Assembly (NCBI GenBank): GCA_012026655.1
Contig: JAAILG010001778.1
Location: 1 to 61,900 of the forward strand
Length of the DNA: 61,900 nt
Direction: 5' to 3'
DNA from: Hydrolagus affinis
Taxonomy: Eukaryota
The translations under genes were made by a program, and so were the position numbers. The notes below the pieces were generated by a model. It saw nothing but the letters and a program-made list of their open reading frames with translations. It ran no database searches and had not been told where the DNA came from. Below, one piece after another: positions 1 through 59,100 of this stretch (positions within the stretch are counted from its first letter, which is position 1; the number at the start of each line of letters is the position of its first letter).

Positions 1-43
1 CATATCGGGATATATCGATATATCGATATATCGCCGGACCCTA
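1..43. mobile_element. Terminus of a hAT-like non-autonomous DNA transposon
   Basis: Ends ...CGCCGGACCCTA (TIR TAGGGTCCGGCG on the minus strand), with tandem GATATATC/ATCGAT subterminal repeats; same terminus as at 61649. Confidence 0.6.
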
Positions 44-254
44 CGTACAAGTAGATTATATCACAATACAGAAAAATTTGGATGAGCTATATGAAAGCCA
101 GGTTTCTAAATACTGGATGACAAATGAAGACAACTGAACAAGAATTTATCCCAACACTGTAAGATGTTATTAAATGCAAAGAAACATATTAAACTTTTTT
201 TTAAAAAAATAGGTTGGTATAACTTAGAAACATACGCAGTACTTCATTTGTTGC

Positions 255-490
255 TGATTTTGTGGGAAAAATGTCCCACAAACAGTCGTGCAATTTATTC
301 TACTTTTTTTAAGGAAATATTACCCACAGGAAAGCCATCCACCAATCGACTGATCACTGGATTCCTTTTTACTGCTAGGTAACAAAGGCATGTGGAGAAA
401 GGAAACACGCCCAACATTTCGCCCCTCCTGGGAATCAAGCTGAGGTCTCTCACTTGCAATGTGAGTGCTCTAACCATTGAGCTGGAGGAC
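255..490 (-). mobile_element. Degenerate tRNA-derived SINE
   Basis: Reverse-complement head GTCCTCCAGCTCAATGGTTAGAGCACTC and the TGTTTGTGGGACA body shared with other copies. Boundaries approximate. Confidence 0.7.
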
Positions 491-985
491 CAAAGTTAAC
501 AAGTCAGCAGCTTTAATAACTCACAGGGCACCACAGTCTAAACATAGCATCTTTACCTCCCATCATCAACAGCCAAATGAGCTAACTGAGAAAACTGCAA
601 AAAGCAAACGATTTTTTTTTCTTAAAGGTTGTTTTTAAAAGATAGGCATCTGCAATGGCTTTTTTAGACAATCATTCTACCCCTCAAAGTGACTTCATAA
701 GGCCTTCAGTTCAGAGCTTAATGGGCAGGGCAACCAAAGCTTTAATGCCAAGAGATTCTTGGATCTGAGTGCACTGGATCCTGTACTGGAATGTTGGCCT
801 AGATGTACCTATATTGACAATGCAGCCTAGATTTATACATTACCCAGACATGTGTCCACTTGTGAATTATCCTGAGACCAACTTTCATATAGCTGGGCAA
901 TCCAAAACCGAGGCAGTCTCATTGTTACATTCAACCTATTTTAACAGTTCAGAATGGTCCTATATTATAAATTGAATAGTATGCA

Positions 986-3080: not shown

Positions 3081-3684
3081 CCAACAAATCATTGCTCCTC
3101 CGTCAATATACTGAATGTGGATACTGTCCTTCCATGGTGAATGGGACAGTATCTACATTAAGTGTATTGATTGCACAAGTTTTAGCATTTCTCTAATATC
3201 TCTAAAGAAATTAAATCAAATCAGTCAAAGAACTCAGGGTAGAGGCTTGATGCATTCGTACAGAAGAAGGGAATAGAGGATGTTTCAGCGCATCTTTCCC
3301 TTCCCCACCCACTTCAGCTTTTACTGAGTGCTCAGTCCTGTGTGCTGGCGTGTTCCTGTGCCAAAAATAAGGCTGACTTCTGGGTCATCAGGTTGCCACT
3401 TTCATAACTTCCTACTTTGTGCACATGTAGCAAACAGGAGAAGAGGTTAGTCAGGTAGCAGGCTGTGAGCAGATTGGCTGAGTGCACACACAGTCAATGA
3501 GATTTAGACAGCACCCATGTTATAACCATATTTGGGCTGTAAAGAAGTGTATTATAATGAGTCCACACTGTATAGGCCCAATTCAATTTAATAATGTACT
3601 TGAAATATAAAATCTGATTTGACCTTGGAAGTGTACTTTTCCTGCAAATGACTATAGATTTCATTCCAGAATGATTCATATTCA

Positions 3685-3849
<165 letters not shown>

Positions 3850-4399
3850 TCAGTACATAAACACGAATGATTCAGGACACTCCTTGGATTAACAGGCACA
3901 TACAATAACTGCATTTATATAGCGTCCTTCACACTGAATAGCATCTGGGAGCGCTGAACAATGGATCAGTTTAATGCCGATCCAGAAGAAAGGGAAGGTG
4001 ACTGTAGGCACGGACGAAATGGAAAGACTTCAGGTGCGATCTGAAGAGGAGCAAGGCGGGGAGGGATTCAGCTCATAAACTCATTTATGTTAATCCGCTT
4101 CCATAGTTGAAGAAAGATATTATTAGAAATTTACATTTCACTGGCCAGAAATCCATTTGACAGGTGGAAAATCCACCTGGGTCTAGATTTTCTCTGTTTG
4201 TGTAGCATTTTAGAATGGCTATAATTTGGCAAATTCTTAAATTCAGCCTTAATCTTGAGGTGTGTTCTCTATTTTAATAAAAAATTAATAATTTAAAAGT
4301 TAATATTAATATCCTTGTATATACTTTAAAGCGGAATGGCTATATATTCATGGTCACACCCCCCGAGATTAATTATTAATACCTCTTTTCCCATTTTGT

Positions 4400-4637
4400 T
4401 GCAACCACCCTCCCCTCAGTTTTGCTCCATTAACACCTCTTTAACCAATCATCCTCTATCCCATTTTCTCTTTTGTCTTCCTTGCCCTGCCTTCCTCTGC
4501 ACTGTTAGTCTTTAAAAGCCTCTCCCTCTCAACATGCCCCAGTTCTGACCAAGGGTCATTGGACACAAAACATGTATTCACTTTCCTTTCTCCATAGATG
4601 CCTGACCTGCTAAGTGTTCTCAGCTACCTGTTTTGGT
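4400..4637 (+). mobile_element. Decayed Penelope-like (pLTR) fragment
   Basis: Pyrimidine-rich leader, then AGTTCTGACCAAGGG...AAAACATG and GATGCCTGACCTGCTAAGTG, similar to the 12538 element. Start approximate. Confidence 0.55.
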
Positions 4638-4922
4638 GACTATATATTTTATGGGCAAAACACATCAGACAATTGTGCATAGCATCGACCCCAAAATAGC
4701 CATGGATTGAGTGACCCCATTTTTTTTTTAAAAAAAGGAGACTAAATTCAATAATTTGGCAAGTTCTGGCGATACATAGATAAATCTAGACCTAAGTGGA
4801 ATTTCCCCAAATGAGTTTCTTCACACAACTGGAGAATACCAGCTTTTATAATAGTATATTTGGCAACATCAAAATTGCATTTGTATCTACTGAAACGTCA
4901 ATTTAGATTTACCAAAGTTTTA

Positions 4923-5174
<252 letters not shown>

Positions 5175-5908
5175 TCAACGTTGAAGTGTTCTCCCGACAG
5201 AAACTATTGATAGTGATGTGAAAAAAAACACCAACACCTTTCCCAACAGGGACACGGGTACCACTGAGTTCCTTGCATTATTTCATACATCGCAGTTTGA
5301 AGTTATTCATGTAGCACCCAAAACTGTCTCCAAACAGATATTAATCCAGTTGACTTTTCATGAACTAATCCACTCATTTTGTTGAGTGATTGTTTCACAT
5401 CTCCATTGCTCAATAGGAAGAAATATCGTCTAATCTCTCATTTTGCTTCAGGCTGGTTAATTTTAAACCACTATTCTCCTGTTCTGCTCTAATGATCGAG
5501 TAGCCTTACTTACATCTATCTACATCATCTATGCCTCAGAGCAATTTAAGATGCAGGGCTTCAATCCTGTGAGAATCTGATGATTCAGATTGGATGAACG
5601 GTTAAAAAAAAACTGACAATGTACTTTTATAGATGGTACCATCAACACACTAAACGTAAATATTAAATATTATACACATCGCCGATAATATGCTACATCA
5701 AACTAATCTTAAGCTTCGACTAAATATTAAACCATTGTTGAAAACTCAATGAGTATTTTATTTTTAAACTGTTGACAAGCATATTGATGTATTGCATCCA
5801 TTGTACTGCAGAATCTCAAGCTAGAACACCAGAATCTCAAGCTGAACTGAAGCTTTAGACAATTTCCCCTGAGTGATGTACCCCTCTGAGCAGCAATGTT
5901 ACTGTGAC

Positions 5909-6019
5909 AAAACACAAATACTGCAGATGCTGGAAACCTGAACCCAATGAATGAAACGTTGACTCACTTTACTTTTCTGATCTGCTGAGGCTTCTCAGCG
6001 ACTTTTGCTTTTGTTTCAG
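5909..6019. mobile_element. Short inverted Penelope-like insert with target-site duplication
   Basis: Inverted fragments of the same family as 12538; flanked by TGTTACTGTGAC (5897-5908) and TGTTACCGTGAC (6020-6031). Confidence 0.7.
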
Positions 6020-6113
6020 TGTTACCGTGACGCTATGTTGCCGGCATCACATTCCTACAGGTACAATGCTAGCATGGATTCACAGAAAAATTCTGGTCAC
6101 AGTCAACACTCAC

Positions 6114-11871: not shown

Positions 11872-12537
11872 TTTGCACTTTTTTGTAAACCCTCCCAGAA
11901 AAGACAATGTTCCATTAAAAGCCAGACTAGGATTTTAAAACTTACTTTGTAATACTAAGAAAACATCCACAAAAAACAAGATTATTGTGTAATAATGTTC
12001 CTTCCAGATCTCAATGTTGTACTTTTTGTGACTATCTGCTCATTAACATTCTGGTTATATATCTGAGAAACGCTTTTCCAAAAGTTACAGGAGTTATTTA
12101 AAAGGTTTAATAACCCCAAATGGCAAAGCTGCTTGGCATAGGAAACATAAGAAAATAGGAACAGGAGGACGCCATTCAGCAGATCGAAACTCAACAGTTT
12201 ATTAGAACTTGATAGGGTTTTGAATCCTGATGTTCTTCCCTTTCATCATAACCCTCATCAAACAGAATATTAGATTGCCTCATCATGTGGCAGACTACTA
12301 AAACTCCCTTTATAATTTTCTTTAAATGTTTGCAAAGTGGACGAACAGATGTCTAAATATTTACAGTAATAGTATAATCCTTGCCTTTACTATAACCCCT
12401 TTCAATATAAGAGTTGCTGCAAGGTGTACCCATGTTAACATATCCAGGGCTTGGAATCCATTTAAGTTGGTTTTCATAGAGATAAGCACTTGCTGCTCAA
12501 CATCTCCAACTTGTGAAACAATCACTCAATAGGTAGA

Positions 12538-12782
12538 AACAAAAACAGAAGTTGCTGGGGAAACTCAGCAGGTCAGGCAGCATCCATGGAGAAAGGAAAA
12601 GGAGTCAACGTTTCGGGTCTACAACCCTTCGTCAGTTCTTCGCCGGTTCTGACGAAGGGTTGTAGACCCGAAACATTGACTTTTTTTCCTTTCTCCATGG
12701 ATGCTGCCTGACCTGCTGAGTTTCCCCAGCAACTTCTGTTTTTGTTTCAGATTCCCAGCATCTGTAGTATTTTGTGTTTTGT
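12538..12782. mobile_element. Palindromic Penelope-like non-autonomous insert with hammerhead core motifs on both strands
   Basis: ~100-bp inverted arms (12536-12635 / 12649-12748); CTGACGA-A-GGGT...ACCC-GAAAC in each arm; flanking duplication ACTCAATAGG(T/C)AGA at 12524 and 12783. Confidence 0.8.
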
Positions 12783-13304
12783 ACTCAATAGGCAGAGATG
12801 TGTGGAGAAGGTGTGGAGGAGGATGGTGGCAATTCTCTCACACATTTCATGCAGAGCTGCGCTGCATATCAGATAGCTCACAGGGAGTTCCTGGTTCCTG
12901 ACGTCTGTTTAGTGATGGCTCAATCTGCACCTGCCACATGTCAAATGACCAACCATTGAATATCCTCCTGGGGAAAGAGATAAGGGGGAAGCTCCTTGGA
13001 GCTGAGCTGTGACATGCTTGGCAATGGAATGTCAAAATCAACTCAATTCTCTGTGGCTGTCTCAGAAGTTTAGTTCCTGAGCTAGGCATGTCCGCCAGTA
13101 CTCGAGGGCACTGCTAATGCAAGACAAGCCAGTCTTAACCTCAGTTAAAAAATGTAATTGGTCCTGGAAACCAGTTACATCGAGAAATGTACATGTGGAA
13201 TATGCTACAGAGGTATGGAGGAAAAGGTGGATAAATTGAACTGAAATGCTGTTTAAAAGAGCCAGCACAGACACAAAGAGCTGAATGGCATTCGTCTGTG
13301 CTGT

Positions 13305-19754: not shown

Positions 19755-20135
19755 AACAACTTGCATTTATATAACCTCCTTTATCCAGGATAGCGTCTCA
19801 GAGCGCTTGACAGTGGTGCAGTTTGATGCCAAGCTGGGGAGAAGTGACTGTAGCCACGGTCAAAGAGGAAGGTCTTTATGTGTGATTTAAGGACCGGGAA
19901 AGAGAAGGCAAGGCAGAATGATTGAGGCAGTGCGTTCCATAGTTTGGGGGCATAGTGGCTGACAGCACAGTTGGCTACGATGCAGCAGAGGGGCAAGGAG
20001 ATGTGCAGAAGGCAGTCGAGCGAAGGCGGCAGGAGTGGAGTGGGGAGAATACGTAGATTGTAGGAGGAAGAGAAGACTGAGGGAGATAGGTTCCACAGAC
20101 TTAGCAAGGGAGCAGGGTACGGTGCGATTCACTCC
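19755..20135 (-). mobile_element. L2-like 3' fragment
   Basis: APKLWNALP...KSHIKTFLF is the L2 ORF2 C-terminal motif; ATAAATGCAAGTTGTT tail. Confidence 0.75.
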
Positions 20136-20185
20136 ATCGTATTGAAATTAACTCAGAATTTGAGACGAGGGTGCAGACTACATAC

Positions 20186-20343
20186 CTAAGGCTCCTAGAT
20201 CGTGGCCGCATTGTAGGGGGTCTTCGTCTGTCATCATTGGAAATGGCATCTGTACTACAGAAATGCTTGGAAAGAAAGTGTAGCTCATCAGGAGTTGGCT
20301 GATATGGCAGCTGATGCAGTTTCTCCTGAGATGAACAAGATGA
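20186..20343 (-). CDS. MAST4: MAST4 exon ([29 protein letters not shown]...MRPRSRSL)
   Basis: 158 nt; cag/gtatgt; phases 0/2. Confidence 0.97.
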
Positions 20344-20782
20344 CTGAAAATACAAAGACAGAGAAAGGTTTAATTTACAAGTAAGAATTCTCTCTCCCCC
20401 CTCCCCACTGGCTCGCAGCCAGGAAATGAAATAGCTATGGAGTTTCACTCTAAAAGTTTACTTCAAGTCAGCATCCTCAGCTCATTCTCAGGTCAACAAC
20501 CTCAGGTGAGCAGTGGATGGAAATATAGTGGTGGAATGTAGAAAGGTTTATAACAAATCTCAAACAAATCATTTGCGCAATGTGTGCACACAGAGCAAGC
20601 AGTTCAGGTTCAGGCTTGTTAGGACTGTGGAAATACCCACTGGGCAGTGAATCGGTCAGGCCTGAACAATGAGTTTTCTGAAGCTAAATGGAAACATTCA
20701 GTCTTTGCTCGATTACCTCCAGTAGTGAGAGACATTTCAGAGTTAGACTTCTAGCTAAGCAGACAAGAGCATTTTACATTAT

Positions 20783-21085
20783 GAGTCCTGTAGCTCAGTG
20801 GTTAGAGTACTCGCCTTGTAAGCAAGAGACTTGGGTTCCATTCCTGGCAGGACGAAACTTTGGGCAAGTTTTCTTATACTGATAATAATCCCTCAAAACA
20901 AACAAGAATGAATTGGTCACTTCAATCCACGATTGTTTGTGGGACACTGCTGTGCGCAACTGGCTGCCATGGTTCGGCCACAAATACAGTCAATTCACTT
21001 TACAGTATATTCGGTGAAGTGCTTTGAGACGTATAGAATACCTGAAAAGCGCGATATGAAATGCAAGGATTATTATTTATTATTA
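20783..21085 (+). mobile_element. Full-length tRNA-derived Deu-type SINE
   Basis: A box TAGCTCAGTGG, degenerate B box, GTGGGACACTGCTGTGCGCAACTGGCTGCC core, (ATT)n tail. Confidence 0.88.
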
Positions 21086-21169: not shown

Positions 21170-21756
<587 letters not shown>

Positions 21757-24749: not shown

Positions 24750-25545
24750 CTGCTAAAGAGATGAATACCGTTTGATCAGTGTTTTTAGCCTTGATAATTT
24801 TTTTTAATCAGAACTACCGCAGAACTGTATGCTTCTTATTGTAAATTTGTGCAATTAATGCACAAATAGGCACATAATAGTAATGTACTTAATAGGCACA
24901 TTTGTTTGAAAAGATTCCACCTGATTCTATTGTGTTGCTCCAGCAGTGATGCTGACTTTTGAGGATCATTCATAGTGCAGATTCAATGACTTTGATCCTC
25001 TACGAGGGCGTTATACAATCACAATTACCCATTCTTATCCAATAATCCTATTGTTTCTCTTTACGGTCACAAAATACACAGTGAAAAATACCTGTTCAAA
25101 AAGAGAAAGTTTTGTTCTCCCGGTGTCCTGGCCAACAATCCCCCAATAAAATTGGTCACTCATTTCATGGCAAATTGAAATTCATGACACGTTCACCTAC
25201 AAATACACTCCATTTCACAATAAATTCTGTGAAGCATTTTGAGATGTTCTTCTGATGTGATAAGGCACTATACAAAATGCAAGGATTATTATTGTTAAAA
25301 CCATCTCTTTTAACTTCTCTACAAGAAGGAGGCATTCCATAGCTTCACAACCCGCTGTGTGAAGAAACGCTTCATGACCTCAGTTCTACTTAGTTCTGAT
25401 TTGAAGACTGTGCCACTAACAGCAATGGATCACTCTATCAGCTAATTTTGTACACAAAAGCAGCCATGAAGTCAACAACCTAGGAAGTTTTGTTCAGGAC
25501 ATCAAGAACTCCCATCTCTTTTCGAATAGTCACGGGATCTTTAAT

Positions 25546-25760
25546 ACATAAACAGAAACTACACAAAAACACAAAAAAGCAAATCCACGTTTCGGGTCCG
25601 CAACCCTTCATTAGACTGTTCTGCCGAAGGATCGTGGACCTGAAACGTTGACTCACTTTTCCTTTCTCCATTAATGCTGCCTGATCTGCTGAGTGTTTCC
25701 AGCGATTTCGGTTTGTGTTTTAGATTTCCAGCATCTGCAGTATTCTACGTTTTTGTTTAT
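25546..25760. mobile_element. Inverted Penelope-like insert nested in a minus-strand SINE
   Basis: Head-to-head degenerate hammerhead cores; exact 12-bp flanking duplication GGGATCTTTAAT (25534-25545 / 25761-25772). Confidence 0.75.
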
Positions 25761-25967
25761 GGGATCTTTAATGTCTGGCAGATGGGACCTTGATCTAATG
25801 TCTCCTTTGAAGGACAGCAACTTCAACATTTGCACCCTTTTCACCTACAGATGTACCACTGAATTTTAGTGTAAGCCTAGACCAGTGGTGGCCAAACTCT
25901 TCGGTTGGCCAACAAAATAAGTGTTTCTTTATTAACTATTTCTTGATTTAAGGTATAAATATATGCT

Positions 25968-45127: not shown

Positions 45128-45436
45128 ATAATAATTCTTGCATTTGATATAGCATTTATCATGTCTTCTAGATGTCTCAAAGCGCTTCACAGAATATATT
45201 GTAAAGTAAATTGACTATATATTTGTGGATGAAATGTGGCAGCCAATTTCGCAGAGCAGTGTCCCACAAACAGTCGTGGATTGAGTGACAAATTTTATTA
45301 GTGTTTTTTTTTCTTGAGGGATTATTATCAGGTGTGTGATGTAAGGAAACTTGACCAAGGTTTCGCCTTGCCATGAATCAAACCCAGATCTCTGGCTTGT
45401 GAGGCAGGTACTCTAACCACTGAGTTACAGGGCTCC
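45128..45436 (-). mobile_element. Full-length tRNA-derived Deu-type SINE
   Basis: Same head, core and tail as the 2210 copy. Confidence 0.85.
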
Positions 45437-46060: not shown

Positions 46061-47551
46061 TCAATGTTGTTGCCCAAGGCACAAAACAAACTCCAGGCCC
46101 TTTCATGAGCCTAGAAATTGTGAAACTTTTGGTTTGGGTTGTCAAATCATGGGGAATAAAAACTGCAATGATCACACTGAATTAAAATTAACTTCCCCGA
46201 TGTCCTCAGTCCAACTGCACACAAAGCAGCGTCCCTAGTTGTGCCCTGGAGGGACATCACTCAACAATCACAATAAAATAACTTCCAAACCGAGAGTATT
46301 TTTTTCACATTGCTGAGTAACTTTAAGTTTGAAGTTTACCACTATGTGAAATCCTAGTCCTACTTTGCCCTAGAGCATTTTTTCAGAAAGATTTTCAACA
46401 GACATACGGAGTTCTTCACCTTTCTTGAAGGCTCAATTTCCCTGGGTGTTACTGGATGCCATCCCTACATCAACACCACCTGCAATTCTATTGTTAGTTT
46501 GCAGAACCAATAAACTACAATGCCATAGTATTGAGAGAACACAATGCTCCTGCCTAATTAGTCGGTCTGTACCAACTAAAAAAATTATCTCCCAATTGAG
46601 CCTTGAAAAATGGCAGCTAAAATCTGTAATTAGAAGTATGAAAACATGCATTTTTTTCACTAGCAATGTTTGAAACAGGTGCAGAAAATAGGAGGAGAGG
46701 AATAGCATTCCCAGTTTAAAAGCATTGTATTCAAACAACTTATCCATATTGGAGTCCAGTAGGTACCCTGTTACAAACAGAAAGATTCCGATTCGAAATG
46801 GATCTTCAAGAAAATGGGAGCATAAATGCTGTCTCAGAGCCAGAAAATGTGCCCAAGAATATAATGTGCATCTCTGGAGGGACTGCTTACATATAGAATT
46901 TGTCTACGACTATCTCAAATTAGTCTACGCTCTCTACGCTCTCTGAGGTCAGAGTGATGAACATGAGGTTCCTTTGAGGAGGCTCAATTTACATAATAAA
47001 TCACTGTTACACGTGTTGGACATTATGATGCTCTTTTTCCTGACAAGTGCTTTTTCAGATGATTCTGCGCTAAGTGTAAACCATGTGAAAATCCATGGAT
47101 ACAGTATATAGGAAATACAGGCATCTTTACTTAATCAATGAAAAGGATTCATTAAATTGCACAAATCCTTTCTATTGGTTCATGACTATATTTACACCTT
47201 TACATATGGTTTACATATAATGATAATATACTGTACCTACATTTGCACATAGTTTACATACTGAATAATCGATAGTATTGTCCTAGCAACTAATGTCAGA
47301 TGTTAAGTACAATGTTGGAGTTAATTCCCATAGTTTGTGAGCCAGTGGACCATGTTGTTCGCAATTTCAATTATCCATCAAGTTGTGGGGTGGGGTGGTG
47401 CGGGGGCCTTCTCTCCACCATGGCAGATGATCAAAATTTCACTTCAACTGCCTATAGCCACCGACCCAGCTGCTGACTTCCCATCCCTTTCCCTTGACTC
47501 TTACTGTTTCTCTCTCTATGACAAGTTCAACAGATCTCTAAAGTGATTTGT

Positions 47552-47779
47552 AAACTGCAAAATACTGCAGATGCTGGAAATCTGAAACAAAACCAGAGAC
47601 TCCTGGGAACACTGAGCAGGCTAGGCAGCATCTATGCAGAAAGGAAGTGGGTCAACATTTCAGGTTCACGACTCTTCGTCAGAATGAAGGGTGGTGCACC
47701 CAAAACGTTGACTCACTTTCCTTTTTCCATGGATGCTACTGGACTTCTTGAGCGTTCCCAGCAACCTCCGTTTTTGTTT
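47552..47779. mobile_element. Palindromic Penelope-like insert with target-site duplication
   Basis: Diverged inverted arms of the 12538 family; flanks CTAAAGTGATTTGT (47538-47551) and CTAAAGTTATTTGT (47780-47793). Confidence 0.75.
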
Positions 47780-48290
47780 CTAAAGTTATTTGTGTTTGCC
47801 AAATCGAAAAAGAAACAAAAACACACTGAAATCTGGAGGTATATGAAGGTAAATGTTTGGATTTTTAAACCCTACAGCGCACCTGTGAGAAACAATCATT
47901 CCATTGTTTCTACCCTTAAATATTAAAATGCTGAAAAAAAAACACCAGTCTACTTCAAACACTCACATACATTTGCAAAACAATAAAAACAGTTTGCAGG
48001 GTTAGCAAATACAATCTCCCTTGACTAACTGTGCCCAGTGCTCAGTTTGCTAGGTTACCATTCTACAGCTAGTGTATACAGCAACTTAAATCATTGGAAG
48101 CAATGGTGGCTTTCAAGTTGTAAATACAAACATCTGTGAACTTTGTAGCTTTGTAAAATTGCAAATAGAAGAATCATAATTGCTTAATATGAAACCAACT
48201 GTTACAACAACAATAACAACAACAAAATTACATTTGTATAACACTTTTCACGTCGGGAGGACGTCACAAACTACTACAGGTTAAAATTAC

Positions 48291-58795: not shown

Positions 58796-59100
58796 AATAA
58801 TAATCCGTGCATTTGATATAGTTTTTTCACATCTTCTAGACATCTCAAAATACTTCACAGAATATACTGTAAAGTGAACTGACTGCACATTTGTGAATGA
58901 AACATGGCAGCCAATTGCGCACAGCAGTGTCCCACAAACAGCCGTGGATTGAAGTAACCAAATTATTATTGTTTTTTTTGTGGGATTATTATTAGGCATG
59001 TGAAGTAAGAAAACTTGCCCAAGGTTTCGTCCTGCCTGGAATCAAACCCAGGTCTCTCGCTTGTAAGATGAGTGCTCTAACTACTGAGCTATAGAACTCC
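58796..59100 (-). mobile_element. Full-length tRNA-derived Deu-type SINE
   Basis: Head, core and tail all present. Confidence 0.87.

What the first reader, a model, noticed from the sequence alone, without database searches (positions are those of the whole stretch)
12524..12796. Fold-back retroelement carrying hammerhead-ribozyme cores on both strands
Seen in sequence: two ~100-bp inverted arms, each with CUGACGA-A-GGGU(UGUAG)ACCC-GAAAC (+ strand 12649-12677; - strand 12635-12607). The whole unit is bracketed by a 10-14 bp duplication, implying one insertion event. Established: CUGANGA...GAAA is the hammerhead core, and Penelope-like elements carry minimal hammerheads with a palindromic ACGU stem III and form inverted pLTRs. 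The arms have complementary defects. The + copy keeps a stem I (GGUU/GACU) but reads GAAACAUU. The - copy, on the MAST4 pre-mRNA strand, keeps GAAACGUU but lost its stem I partner at the inversion junction. Inference: a non-autonomous retrozyme-like family; this copy is probably catalytically impaired and would fold into a long dsRNA hairpin in the pre-mRNA.
Basis: partly seen in the sequence, partly recalled or inferred. Interest (0 to 1): 0.8.

Follow-up and report, generated by a model that had tools for sequence, protein, structure and literature searches.

The report
Truncated head-to-head Penelope-like retroelement insertion
This is an ordinary dead copy of a very abundant Penelope-like retrotransposon end that landed in an intron as two inverted halves, each carrying a decayed minimal hammerhead-ribozyme motif; this layout is already described for these elements.

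Summary
Two 100-nt arms (12536-12635, 12649-12748) are 97% complementary. Each carries CUGACGA-A-GGGUU..GACCC-GAAAC, and a 14-bp duplication with one mismatch brackets the unit.

It is not a special fold-back family. It matches the published layout of a 5'-truncated Penelope-like element (PLE) insertion: an inverted truncated copy placed head to head, a 30-40 bp "tail" at one end only, a target-site duplication, and a minimal hammerhead in the terminal repeat (PMC4209133, PMC8557442, PMC3846280, PMC11167929).

The window holds 5 insertions of this family. All 4 fold-back insertions have one end with a 33-38 nt tail and one without. Their turning points and arm lengths differ, so each was made at insertion. 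Contigs of four coded organisms lay on it in thousands, with depth falling towards the 5' side.

Rfam's hammerhead models do not match. Covariation in 7 arms is not significant. No RT/GIY-YIG ORF could be linked. This copy is very probably inactive as a ribozyme and folds into a 113-bp hairpin in a MAST-family intron.

The scan noted this family at least 87 times elsewhere in this genome; those notes are unchecked.

The parts
12524..12537 (.). Left copy of the target-site duplication (ACTCAATAGGTAGA). The last 2 nt could equally be element sequence.
   Evidence: family D2.
12536..12635 (-). Short arm: the element's 3' part in - orientation. It runs from the first base of the CUGA box (12635) to the 'no-tail' end (12536-12538).
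   Evidence: pair I1; (reference positions 1..100, 97 of 100 identical to the long arm).
12607..12635 (-). Minimal hammerhead motif on the host pre-mRNA strand: CUGACGA, extra A, stem II GGGUU/GACCC, GAAA, ACGU palindrome, U17. The predicted cut lies between 12607 and 12606. There is no helix I partner (GAAGAA upstream).
   Evidence: by reading; pattern matches; alignment.
12636..12645 (.). 10-nt filler at the turning point (TTCTTCGCCG). It is not family sequence.
   Evidence: loose ends: at 12635 and 12646 the family goes on with other letters; the long arm's family match starts at 12646.
12646..12748 (+). Long arm, the part shared with the short arm. It starts 3 nt before the CUGA box.
12649..12677 (+). 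Minimal hammerhead motif on the + strand. It has the same core, but reads GAAACAUU (the C15.2-G16.2 palindrome is broken by a CpG-type transition). Helix I is GGUU/GACU, 4 bp with two G-U pairs.
   Evidence: by reading.
12749..12782 (+). 34-nt 'tail': an extension present at this end only.
   Evidence: One search shows loose ends without consensus after 12780/12782, which marks the family's end. It matches the 30-40 bp one-sided tail described in PMC8557442 and PMC3846280.
12783..12796 (.). Right copy of the target-site duplication (ACTCAATAGGCAGA).
   Evidence: family D2.
25546..25758 (+). Second fold-back copy of the family. The long arm with tail is on +. The short - arm has an internal deletion. 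The 14-bp duplication lies at 25532-25545 / 25759-25772 (13 of 14).
47552..47778 (-). Third fold-back copy. The long arm with tail is on - and the short arm on +. The 15-bp duplication lies at 47537-47551 / 47779-47793 (14 of 15).
5909..6019 (+). Fourth fold-back copy. The - arm is the tail region only (about 5907-5947). The + arm starts inside the hammerhead and ends without a tail. The 12-bp duplication lies at 5897-5908 / 6020-6031 (11 of 12).
4357..4637 (+). Fifth copy, not folded back. It has a decayed hammerhead at 4545-4575, about 190 nt of sequence upstream of it, and an end without a tail. Its flanks share CTATATATT within a 12-17 bp imperfect duplication. The 5' boundary is approximate.
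   Evidence: Its 30 nt upstream of the CUGA box match the reverse complement of the loose-end majority printed.

Best explanation
The unit 12538-12782 is one dead-on-arrival insertion of the 3'-terminal part of a very abundant Penelope-like retroelement (PLE) family.

Steps shown by the data:
- It was inserted in one event, at a staggered break that left a 14-bp duplication.
- Both outer ends are the family's two regular 3' ends, 34 nt apart.
- The two halves lie head to head and meet within 3 nt of the 5' edge of the hammerhead motif, with 10 nt of filler between them.

Steps inferred:
- The two ends correspond to the two adjacent reverse-transcription start sites shown in vitro for the Anolis PLE PAc.
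- The head-to-head layout arose because cDNA synthesis was primed on both cut strands of the target. PAc cleaves and extends both strands in vitro.
- The two cDNAs stopped at or near the hammerhead and were joined by repair.

The hammerhead motif belongs to the element's terminal repeat. In a tandem source copy it could process the transcript as a dimer. In this copy it has no role. One arm has lost helix I and the other has lost the ACGU palindrome. On any transcript the sense motif is paired to its antisense partner in a 113-bp hairpin.
For: Anatomy of this copy:
- Arms, spacer and duplication are confirmed.
- One arm is 34 nt longer than the other.

Family behaviour in the window:
- There are 5 insertions, 4 of them fold-backs.
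- 4 of 4 fold-backs have one end with the 33-38 nt tail and one without.
- Duplications are 12, 14, 14 and 15 bp in the four fold-backs. The fifth copy has an imperfect one of about 12-17 bp.
- 6 of 8 inner arm ends lie between -2 and +6 of the first base of the CUGA box. The other two lie at +22 and +93.
- Arms are 97% alike within this copy but 79-85% alike between copies.

Family behaviour in reads:
- 20141, 23249, 1044 and 2790 contigs of four runs lay on the stretch.
- In the first run (X3), summed depth falls from about 2.8 million (12564-12587) to 0.65 million (12612-12635) and 0.11 million (12636-12659). This fits 5' truncation.
- Flanks at 12537 and at 12780/12782 are AT-rich and have no consensus.
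- The family continues upstream of the hammerhead.
- Contigs of organism A cover both outer junctions of this locus (records 25 and 32).

Literature:
- PMC4209133 (whole main text read up to the start of Methods): minimal hammerheads in PLE terminal repeats. [quoted passage not shown] Pairs on opposite strands 100-700 bp apart were seen.
- PMC3846280 (passages): inverted terminal repeat plus a 31-bp tail plus a 9-bp duplication.
- PMC11167929 (passages): two reverse-transcription start sites that correspond to the tail, both strands cleaved and extended, and AT-rich targets.
Against: - No RT or GIY-YIG ORF is present in the window. One search lists 12 ORFs of 110 aa or more. 8 of these were scanned, and 10 ORFs of 61-101 aa on the - strand between 3494 and 12194 were scanned. 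Only host kinase-gene domains were found. The link to an autonomous PLE therefore rests on layout and motif alone.
- Rfam's hammerhead models give no match at E up to 10, on the 501-nt region or on one arm alone.
- Covariation in the 7 motif-bearing arms is not significant. 114 to 275 of 500 shuffles reach the observed values. There is only one compensatory pair in stem II (C-G to G-C in the + arm at 47686).
- No empty site in a relative was seen among the joints listed, and no RNA run was available.
- Priming on both strands is an inference. The papers I read do not state that it makes the inverted copies. PMC3846280 proposes self-priming instead.
Confidence: 0.85

Rival explanations
1. The inverted half arose by self-priming: the nascent cDNA, or an antisense template, folded back on a short palindrome and copied itself. 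Priming on both target strands played no part. The element and its identity are the same; only the mechanism of inversion differs.
For: PMC3846280 (passage in its Discussion) interprets palindromes at inverted PLE junctions as self-priming. In the copy at 25546-25758 the two arms overlap in a short palindromic stretch (ACTGT / ACAGT) at the turn. The arms of this copy are 97% alike, as expected if one was copied from the other.
Against: A copy made by fold-back should run to the end of the first strand. Here 4 of 4 fold-backs end at two different regular sites, one with and one without the tail. This copy has 10 nt of filler and no palindrome at the turn. PAc extends both target strands in vitro (PMC11167929).
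Confidence: 0.3
2. This is a non-autonomous, retrozyme-like or fold-back mini-element that is transcribed and retro-inserted as a complete inverted unit.
For: The 3' part of the family is far more abundant than the part with the hammerhead. Fold-backs are 4 of 5 copies in this window. Two contigs of another organism also span a head-to-head hammerhead pair (records 3 and 4). A 2026 preprint argues that animal retrozymes derive from PLE terminal repeats (10.64898/2026.07.22.740005; abstract and part 1 of 2 of the Results read).
Against: Turning point, filler and arm lengths differ in each of the 4 fold-backs. There are no direct tandem repeats. A non-inverted copy extends about 190 nt upstream. 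A transcript with a 100-bp perfect hairpin is a poor template. Abundance that falls towards the 5' side is what truncated reverse transcription gives.
Confidence: 0.07
3. This is a DNA transposon of the MITE or foldback type, with terminal inverted repeats.
For: It has long inverted arms and flanking duplications.
Against: The two termini are not inverted copies of each other, because one arm is 34 nt longer. The duplication length varies from 12 to 15 bp. The inner junctions vary, one copy has a single arm, and depth shows a 5' truncation gradient.
Confidence: 0.02
4. This is a host-selected hairpin RNA (a microRNA precursor or a regulatory double-stranded RNA) in the kinase gene's intron.
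For: The hairpin is very stable. There are sub-threshold matches to several microRNA precursor models (best 47.7 bits against a gathering score of 99).
Against: All the microRNA matches are far below the gathering scores and occur on both strands, as any long hairpin would give. The sequence is a multi-thousand-copy repeat. No RNA data were available.
Confidence: 0.03

Closest known systems
Minimal hammerhead motifs (min-HHR) of metazoan Penelope-like elements (Cervera and de la Pena 2014, PMC4209133)
   Same: The motif has a CUGANGA box, one unpaired nucleotide before stem II (here A), a G10.1-C11.1 pair and a GAAA box. It has no helix III of its own but an ACGU palindrome at 15.1-16.1. Helix I is about 4 bp. 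The motif is massively spread as single, mostly truncated copies, and some pairs lie on opposite strands close together.
   Different: Stem II is 5 bp here, against 7-8 bp in the Schistosoma families and 6 bp in Drosophila virilis. The site reads GUU, not the GUC that I recall as more usual. The paper's vertebrate families are in supplementary figures that I could not see, so I cannot say whether this family is among them.
Canonical insertion layout of endonuclease-positive PLEs (Arkhipova et al. 2013, PMC3846280; Craig et al. 2021, PMC8557442)
   Same: The copy is 5'-truncated, with an inverted 5'-truncated copy directly adjacent. A 30-40 bp tail is present at one end only (34 nt here). The whole unit is flanked by a target-site duplication.
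   Different: Here the direct part is itself cut off at the hammerhead. No ORF and no direct terminal-repeat pair remain; only two short inverted halves of 100 and 137 nt are left.
Poseidon PAc of Anolis carolinensis, in vitro system (PMC11167929)
   Same: There are two element ends 30-40 nt apart downstream of the hammerhead, matching PAc's two reverse-transcription start sites. Flanks are AT-rich. The hammerhead lies upstream of those sites and has an extra nucleotide after the CUGANGA box.
   Different: I saw no sequence similarity beyond the motif. PAc's start sites lie in an AC-rich stem-loop inside its ORF, whereas here the region is U/G-rich in the sense of the hammerhead and I see no ORF. 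The activity of this family's protein is unknown.
Animal non-LTR retrozymes (Cervera and de la Pena 2020, PMC7229834, listing only; Li et al. 2026 preprint, abstract and part 1 of 2 of the Results)
   Same: They carry type I hammerheads that need dimers, and they are related to PLE terminal repeats.
   Different: Retrozymes are direct tandem repeats that give circular RNAs. This unit is an inverted pair with no same-strand neighbour.

Membership tests
PLE minimal hammerhead (min-HHR, PMC4209133) | Conserved boxes CUGANGA and GAAA in the right order and spacing | tested here: met
   Both arms carry them. In 7 aligned arms of the window the boxes are intact in 3 and carry one to three substitutions in the other 4.
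PLE minimal hammerhead (min-HHR, PMC4209133) | [quoted passage not shown] | tested here: met
   The extra A is invariant in 7 of 7 arms (columns 15-16). The 17-30 pair is G-C in 5 arms and G-U in 2.
PLE minimal hammerhead (min-HHR, PMC4209133) | Palindromic 15.2-16.2 (no own helix III; a dimer forms it) | tested here: inconclusive
   The - arm has ACGU and the + arm ACAU. In 7 arms the pair is C-G in 4, U-G in 1 and broken in 2. The majority form printed has ACGU. Dimer formation itself cannot be shown by these tools; cofolding does not single out that helix.
PLE minimal hammerhead (min-HHR, PMC4209133) | Helix I of 4-5 bp | tested here: inconclusive
   The + arm has GGUU/GACU, 4 bp with two G-U pairs; its first G comes from the filler. 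The - arm has no helix I. In 7 arms, 70.4% of helix I cells are paired.
PLE minimal hammerhead (min-HHR, PMC4209133) | Covariation supporting the stems | tested here: inconclusive
   2 pairs have changes on both sides. 265 of 500 shuffles reach that, and 114 of 500 reach the covariation score. Seven arms are too few.
PLE minimal hammerhead (min-HHR, PMC4209133) | Self-cleavage | not testable with these tools
   No RNA run holds the stretch. The literature reports low activity even for intact dimers (PMC4209133) and no reads ending at the site for PAc (PMC11167929).
Rfam hammerhead families (types I, II, III, HH9, HH10) | Match to a curated covariance model | tested here: not met
   There is no hammerhead match at the gathering score in the window. 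There is none at E up to 10 in 12400-12900 or in 12590-12645. This is expected for a motif without its own helix III.
Penelope-like element insertion (PMC8557442, PMC3846280) | Inverted 5'-truncated copy directly adjacent, head to head | tested here: met
   4 of 5 family copies in the window have it.
Penelope-like element insertion (PMC8557442, PMC3846280) | [quoted passage not shown] | tested here: met
   The tail is 34 nt here (12749-12782). It is one-sided in 4 of 4 fold-backs.
Penelope-like element insertion (PMC8557442, PMC3846280) | Target-site duplication around the whole complex unit | tested here: met
   The duplications are 14 bp (13 of 14) here, and 12, 14 and 15 bp, each with one mismatch, in the other fold-backs.
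Penelope-like element insertion (PMC8557442, PMC3846280) | Source element codes for a PLE reverse transcriptase with a GIY-YIG endonuclease | not testable with these tools
   There is no such ORF in the window. No collection of animal genomes is on hand. One unchecked scan note (s1-907475) reports a GIY-YIG fossil followed by a hammerhead elsewhere in this genome.
Non-LTR retrozyme | Direct tandem repeats, one hammerhead per unit on the same strand | tested here: not met
   One search shows no direct repeat of the unit; the model built from the 7 arms finds only those arms plus one fragment, and never two on one strand of one insertion.
MITE / foldback DNA transposon | Matching terminal inverted repeats at both tips, and a fixed duplication length | tested here: not met
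   The tips differ by the 34-nt tail. The duplications are 12-15 bp.

The most novel reading that the evidence does not exclude
The hammerhead region may be where the PLE insertion reaction turns. In this window, 6 of 8 inner arm ends lie within 6 nt of the first base of the CUGA box, and every fold-back pairs one tail-bearing end with one tail-less end. This fits a dimeric PLE complex that primes cDNA on both cut target strands, each half using a different one of the two start sites. The hammerhead, either as a folded or dimerised RNA or as a near-palindrome in the cDNA, would then stop reverse transcription and let the two cDNAs be joined. The conserved 'ribozyme' of metazoan PLEs would then serve mainly as a structural stop-and-join signal and only secondarily as a self-cleaving RNA. 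That would explain its poor cleavage in vitro.
Probability: 0.2. Interest if true: 0.55.

Novelty: new member of a known kind. Interest (0 to 1): 0.15.

Why it matters
On its own it matters little. It is one of many thousands of dead copies of a known class of retroelement, and the scan has flagged the same family many times in this genome. Its use is practical. It gives a rule for recognising such copies: two regular ends 34 nt apart, a one-sided tail, a 12-15 bp duplication, and a turn at the hammerhead. With that rule, further notes on this family can be closed quickly. A genome with this many young copies would also be good material for a census of how PLE insertions are resolved, a step that PMC8557442 names as not understood. 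The long intronic hairpin could be a substrate for RNA editing or for small-RNA pathways; that was not tested.

Tried and rejected
- **Rfam.** The gathering-score search of the whole window gave only five tRNA-like matches. Searches at E up to 10 on the region and on one arm gave no hammerhead. They gave only sub-threshold microRNA models driven by the hairpin, and one meaningless leader match.
- **Metagenome scan.** The scan for an 18-nt stretch of the motif gave 4 contigs. All are G+C-rich (0.50-0.65) with no family sequence around the match. They are chance matches and were not used.
- **More copies in the window.** A covariance model built from the 7 arms and run with filters off found only the 7 training arms and one fragment (5936-5972, 23.4 bits). 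The remaining 20 matches have E above 0.5.
- **Covariation test.** Not significant.
- **Empty site in relatives.** One search listed no joint that skips the whole unit, but 232 joints were not shown, so the question stays open.
- **RNA evidence.** No RNA run holds the stretch.
- **Lunse, Weinberg and Breaker (RNA Biol).** The paper is not held. I know it only from the reference list and one summarising passage of PMC6765202.
- **Supplements.** I opened none. The vertebrate motif families of PMC4209133 (its figures S2-S4 and table S1) and the per-species tables of the 2026 preprint may already show this family.
- **In-print check.** ('penelope', 'hammerhead ribozyme', 'shark') found one review and nothing specific. 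The guess that the genome is a cartilaginous fish is my recollection of similar repeats and comes from no call. One search shows only coded organisms and 'fish gut metagenome' among the holders.
- **Scan's own notes.** The look-up by sequence was blank.
- **Palindrome at 21170-21524.** I considered it as a further copy and dropped it. It has no similarity to the arm and no core boxes.
Full report
**What is there.**
- One search finds two arms, 12536-12635 and 12649-12748. They are 100 nt long and 97% complementary, with 13 nt between them.
- One search also finds a 14-nt direct repeat, 13 of 14 identical, at 12524-12537 and 12783-12796. It abuts the unit on both sides.
- Each arm carries CTGACGA, an extra A, GGGTT GTA GACCC, then GAAAC. 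This lies on the + strand from 12649 and on the - strand from 12635.
- A loose core pattern matches only these two places in 61.9 kb, against 0.04 expected. The two are copies of each other.
- As RNA, the - strand of 12524-12796 folds into one hairpin of -196.7 kcal/mol. Shuffles give -68.7 +/- 4.3, so z = -29.8.

**The family in the window.** A blastn search of the long arm against the window, followed by reading, an alignment and pairwise mapping, gives five insertions.
- Four are fold-backs: this one, 25546-25758, 47552-47778 and 5909-6019.
- One is a single + strand copy (about 4357-4637). It extends about 190 nt upstream of the hammerhead.
- All four fold-backs are bracketed by duplications of 12, 14, 14 and 15 bp, each with one mismatch.
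- In all four, one outer end stops at the same place (window string ...CTTCTGTTTTTGTTTC in this copy) and the other runs 33-38 nt further.
- The long end is on the + strand in two copies and on the - strand in two.
- The inner ends differ from copy to copy. Relative to the first base of the CUGA box they lie at -2 and +1 (this copy, with 10 nt of filler), -2 and 0, -1 and +6, and +22 and +93.
- The arms of this copy are 97% alike, but only 79-85% like the other copies.

Each fold-back was therefore made at its own insertion, from one source or from very similar sources. The fold-back is not a unit that moves.

**The family in reads.** One search lists 20 runs from 11 studies that hold the stretch or part of it, none on record as RNA. 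The organisms are coded, and two rows are 'fish gut metagenome'. laid contigs of four runs (organisms A-D) on 12300-13000 at 85% likeness.
- 20141, 23249, 1044 and 2790 contigs were laid, nearly all of them on the insert.
- In the first run (X3), summed depth is about 2.8 million at 12564-12587, 0.65 million at 12612-12635 and 0.11 million at 12636-12659. The right arm mirrors this. The figure is a poor measure, but it shows the slope expected of 5'-truncated copies.
- Loose ends before 12537 and after 12780/12782 are AT-rich and have no consensus (agreement about 0.4). These are the ends of the element.
- Loose ends after 12635 and before 12646 do have a common start. Its reverse complement matches the 30 nt upstream of the hammerhead in the copy at 4357-4637.
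- So the family goes on upstream of the motif, 12636-12645 is filler, and the + arm starts at 12646.
- The majority form printed at 12601 has stem II as GGGUC/GACCC, followed by GAAACGUUGACUCA.
- Contigs of organism A cover both outer junctions of this locus (records 25 and 32), so the insertion is not an assembly artefact.
- No listed joint skips the whole unit. 232 joints were not shown.

**Comparison with what is published.**
- Cervera and de la Pena 2014 (PMC4209133; main text read up to the start of Methods) describe minimal hammerheads in the terminal repeats of all PLEs. Their features are no helix III of their own, a palindromic 15.2-16.2, an unpaired nucleotide between 9 and 10.1, a conserved G10.1-C11.1 pair and a helix I of 4-5 bp. 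They are spread mostly as single truncated copies and are sometimes paired on opposite strands 100-700 bp apart. They work, if at all, as dimers and have low activity in vitro.
- Craig et al. 2021 (PMC8557442; passages) and Arkhipova et al. 2013 (PMC3846280; passages) describe the insertion layout. It is highly 5'-truncated, often has an inverted 5'-truncated copy directly adjacent, has a 30-40 bp tail often at one end only, and has a duplication around the whole.
- The 2024 Mobile DNA paper on the Anolis element PAc (PMC11167929; passages) shows two adjacent reverse-transcription start sites whose distance corresponds to the tail. It also shows cleavage and extension of both target strands, AT-rich targets, and no need for hammerhead cleavage in vitro.

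Every structural feature of the present unit is in this list.

**Tests of the hammerhead reading.**
- Rfam does not support it. No hammerhead model matches at the gathering score. None matches at E up to 10 on the region or on one arm alone. The matches that do appear are microRNA precursor models far below threshold, on both strands, as for any long hairpin.
- This negative result is expected for a motif without helix III, but it stands.
- In an alignment of the 7 motif-bearing arms, the named structure is formed in 81.6% of cells, against 17-48% when the partners are slid. I derived the structure from these same sequences.
- Covariation is not significant: 114 of 500 shuffles reach the score, and there is one compensatory C-G to G-C change in stem II.
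- The motif therefore fits the published descriptor feature by feature at family level. The window alone cannot prove selection on the fold.

**This copy's motifs.** Both are damaged.
- The - arm lacks a helix I partner, because the arm ends at the CUGA box.
- The + arm has ACAU in place of ACGU.
- The arms differ at three places. At two of them (12675 and 12682) the + arm departs from the family majority.

**How it most likely arose.**
- Shown: one insertion event with a staggered break, two regular ends 34 nt apart, a head-to-head layout, and a turn at the 5' edge of the hammerhead with filler.
- Inferred: the two ends are two reverse-transcription start sites. Both cut strands primed cDNA, as PAc does in vitro. 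The two cDNAs, both antisense, ran up to the hammerhead region and were joined.
- The rival mechanism is self-priming on a palindrome (PMC3846280). It would explain the near-identity of the arms. It does not easily explain why 4 of 4 fold-backs end at two different regular sites. I put about 0.5 on two-strand priming and 0.3 on self-priming. Both sit within an overall 0.85 that this is a truncated head-to-head PLE insertion.

**Host context.** A DUF1908 exon (20101-20448, - strand, E 3.6e-22) and a protein-kinase exon (4920-5144, - strand, E 5.2e-11) flank the insert. A further - strand ORF at 3682-3849 shows HRDLKPD in its translation. The paralogue was not tested. On that pre-mRNA the sense motif of the - arm is paired with its antisense partner in the hairpin, so no ribozyme activity is expected. 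Whether the hairpin is edited or diced is unknown.

**Novelty and score.** The kind is fully described. This is one more copy, in a genome where the scan's first readers noted the same thing at least 87 times. One search lists 209 notes that fit its words. All are unchecked titles, and none is counted here as evidence. I could not check Repbase or Dfam, or the supplements of the two most relevant papers, so I cannot say whether this particular family is in print. Interest is low. The one thread worth a census is the regular pairing of a tail-bearing end with a tail-less end, together with the clustering of turning points at the hammerhead (6 of 8 inner ends within 6 nt in this window). That count was made after seeing the pattern and covers only four insertions.

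Noticed in passing
It is a different element: it has no similarity to the PLE arm and no hammerhead boxes by eye. The arms reach the tips, and about 10 nt lie at the centre.
   Followed up: partly
window 420-491, 2454-2525, 20784-20855, 45363-45434, 59027-59098: Five tRNA-model matches (29-53 bits) with very similar sequences. These are probably heads of a tRNA-derived SINE family, not tRNA genes.
   Followed up: no
window 4500-4544 (copy at 4357-4637), and the loose-end majority: The family sequence just upstream of the hammerhead is a pyrimidine-rich run ending in CAG, 2 nt before the CUGA box. It looks like a 3' splice site. PMC4209133 says the Drosophila virilis Penelope intron ends at the 5' end of helix I. 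Six of eight fold-back turning points in the window lie at this spot.
   Followed up: no
window 25546-25615: The short arm of this fold-back joins the hammerhead (ending GAAACGT) almost directly to the tail-less end. About 60 nt present in the other arms are missing, through an internal deletion or a template switch.
   Followed up: partly
window 3682-3849, 4920-5144, 20101-20448 (all - strand): These are exons of a MAST-family kinase gene: DUF1908, the start of the kinase domain, and the catalytic-loop motif HRDLKPD. Two PLE copies (4357-4637 and 5909-6019) flank the 4920-5144 exon within about 300-800 nt.
   Followed up: partly
window 12636-12650: The filler at the turn repeats GTTCT (12635-12639 and 12646-12650) around TCGCCG. 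It looks like a slip or a short re-copy during joining.
   Followed up: no
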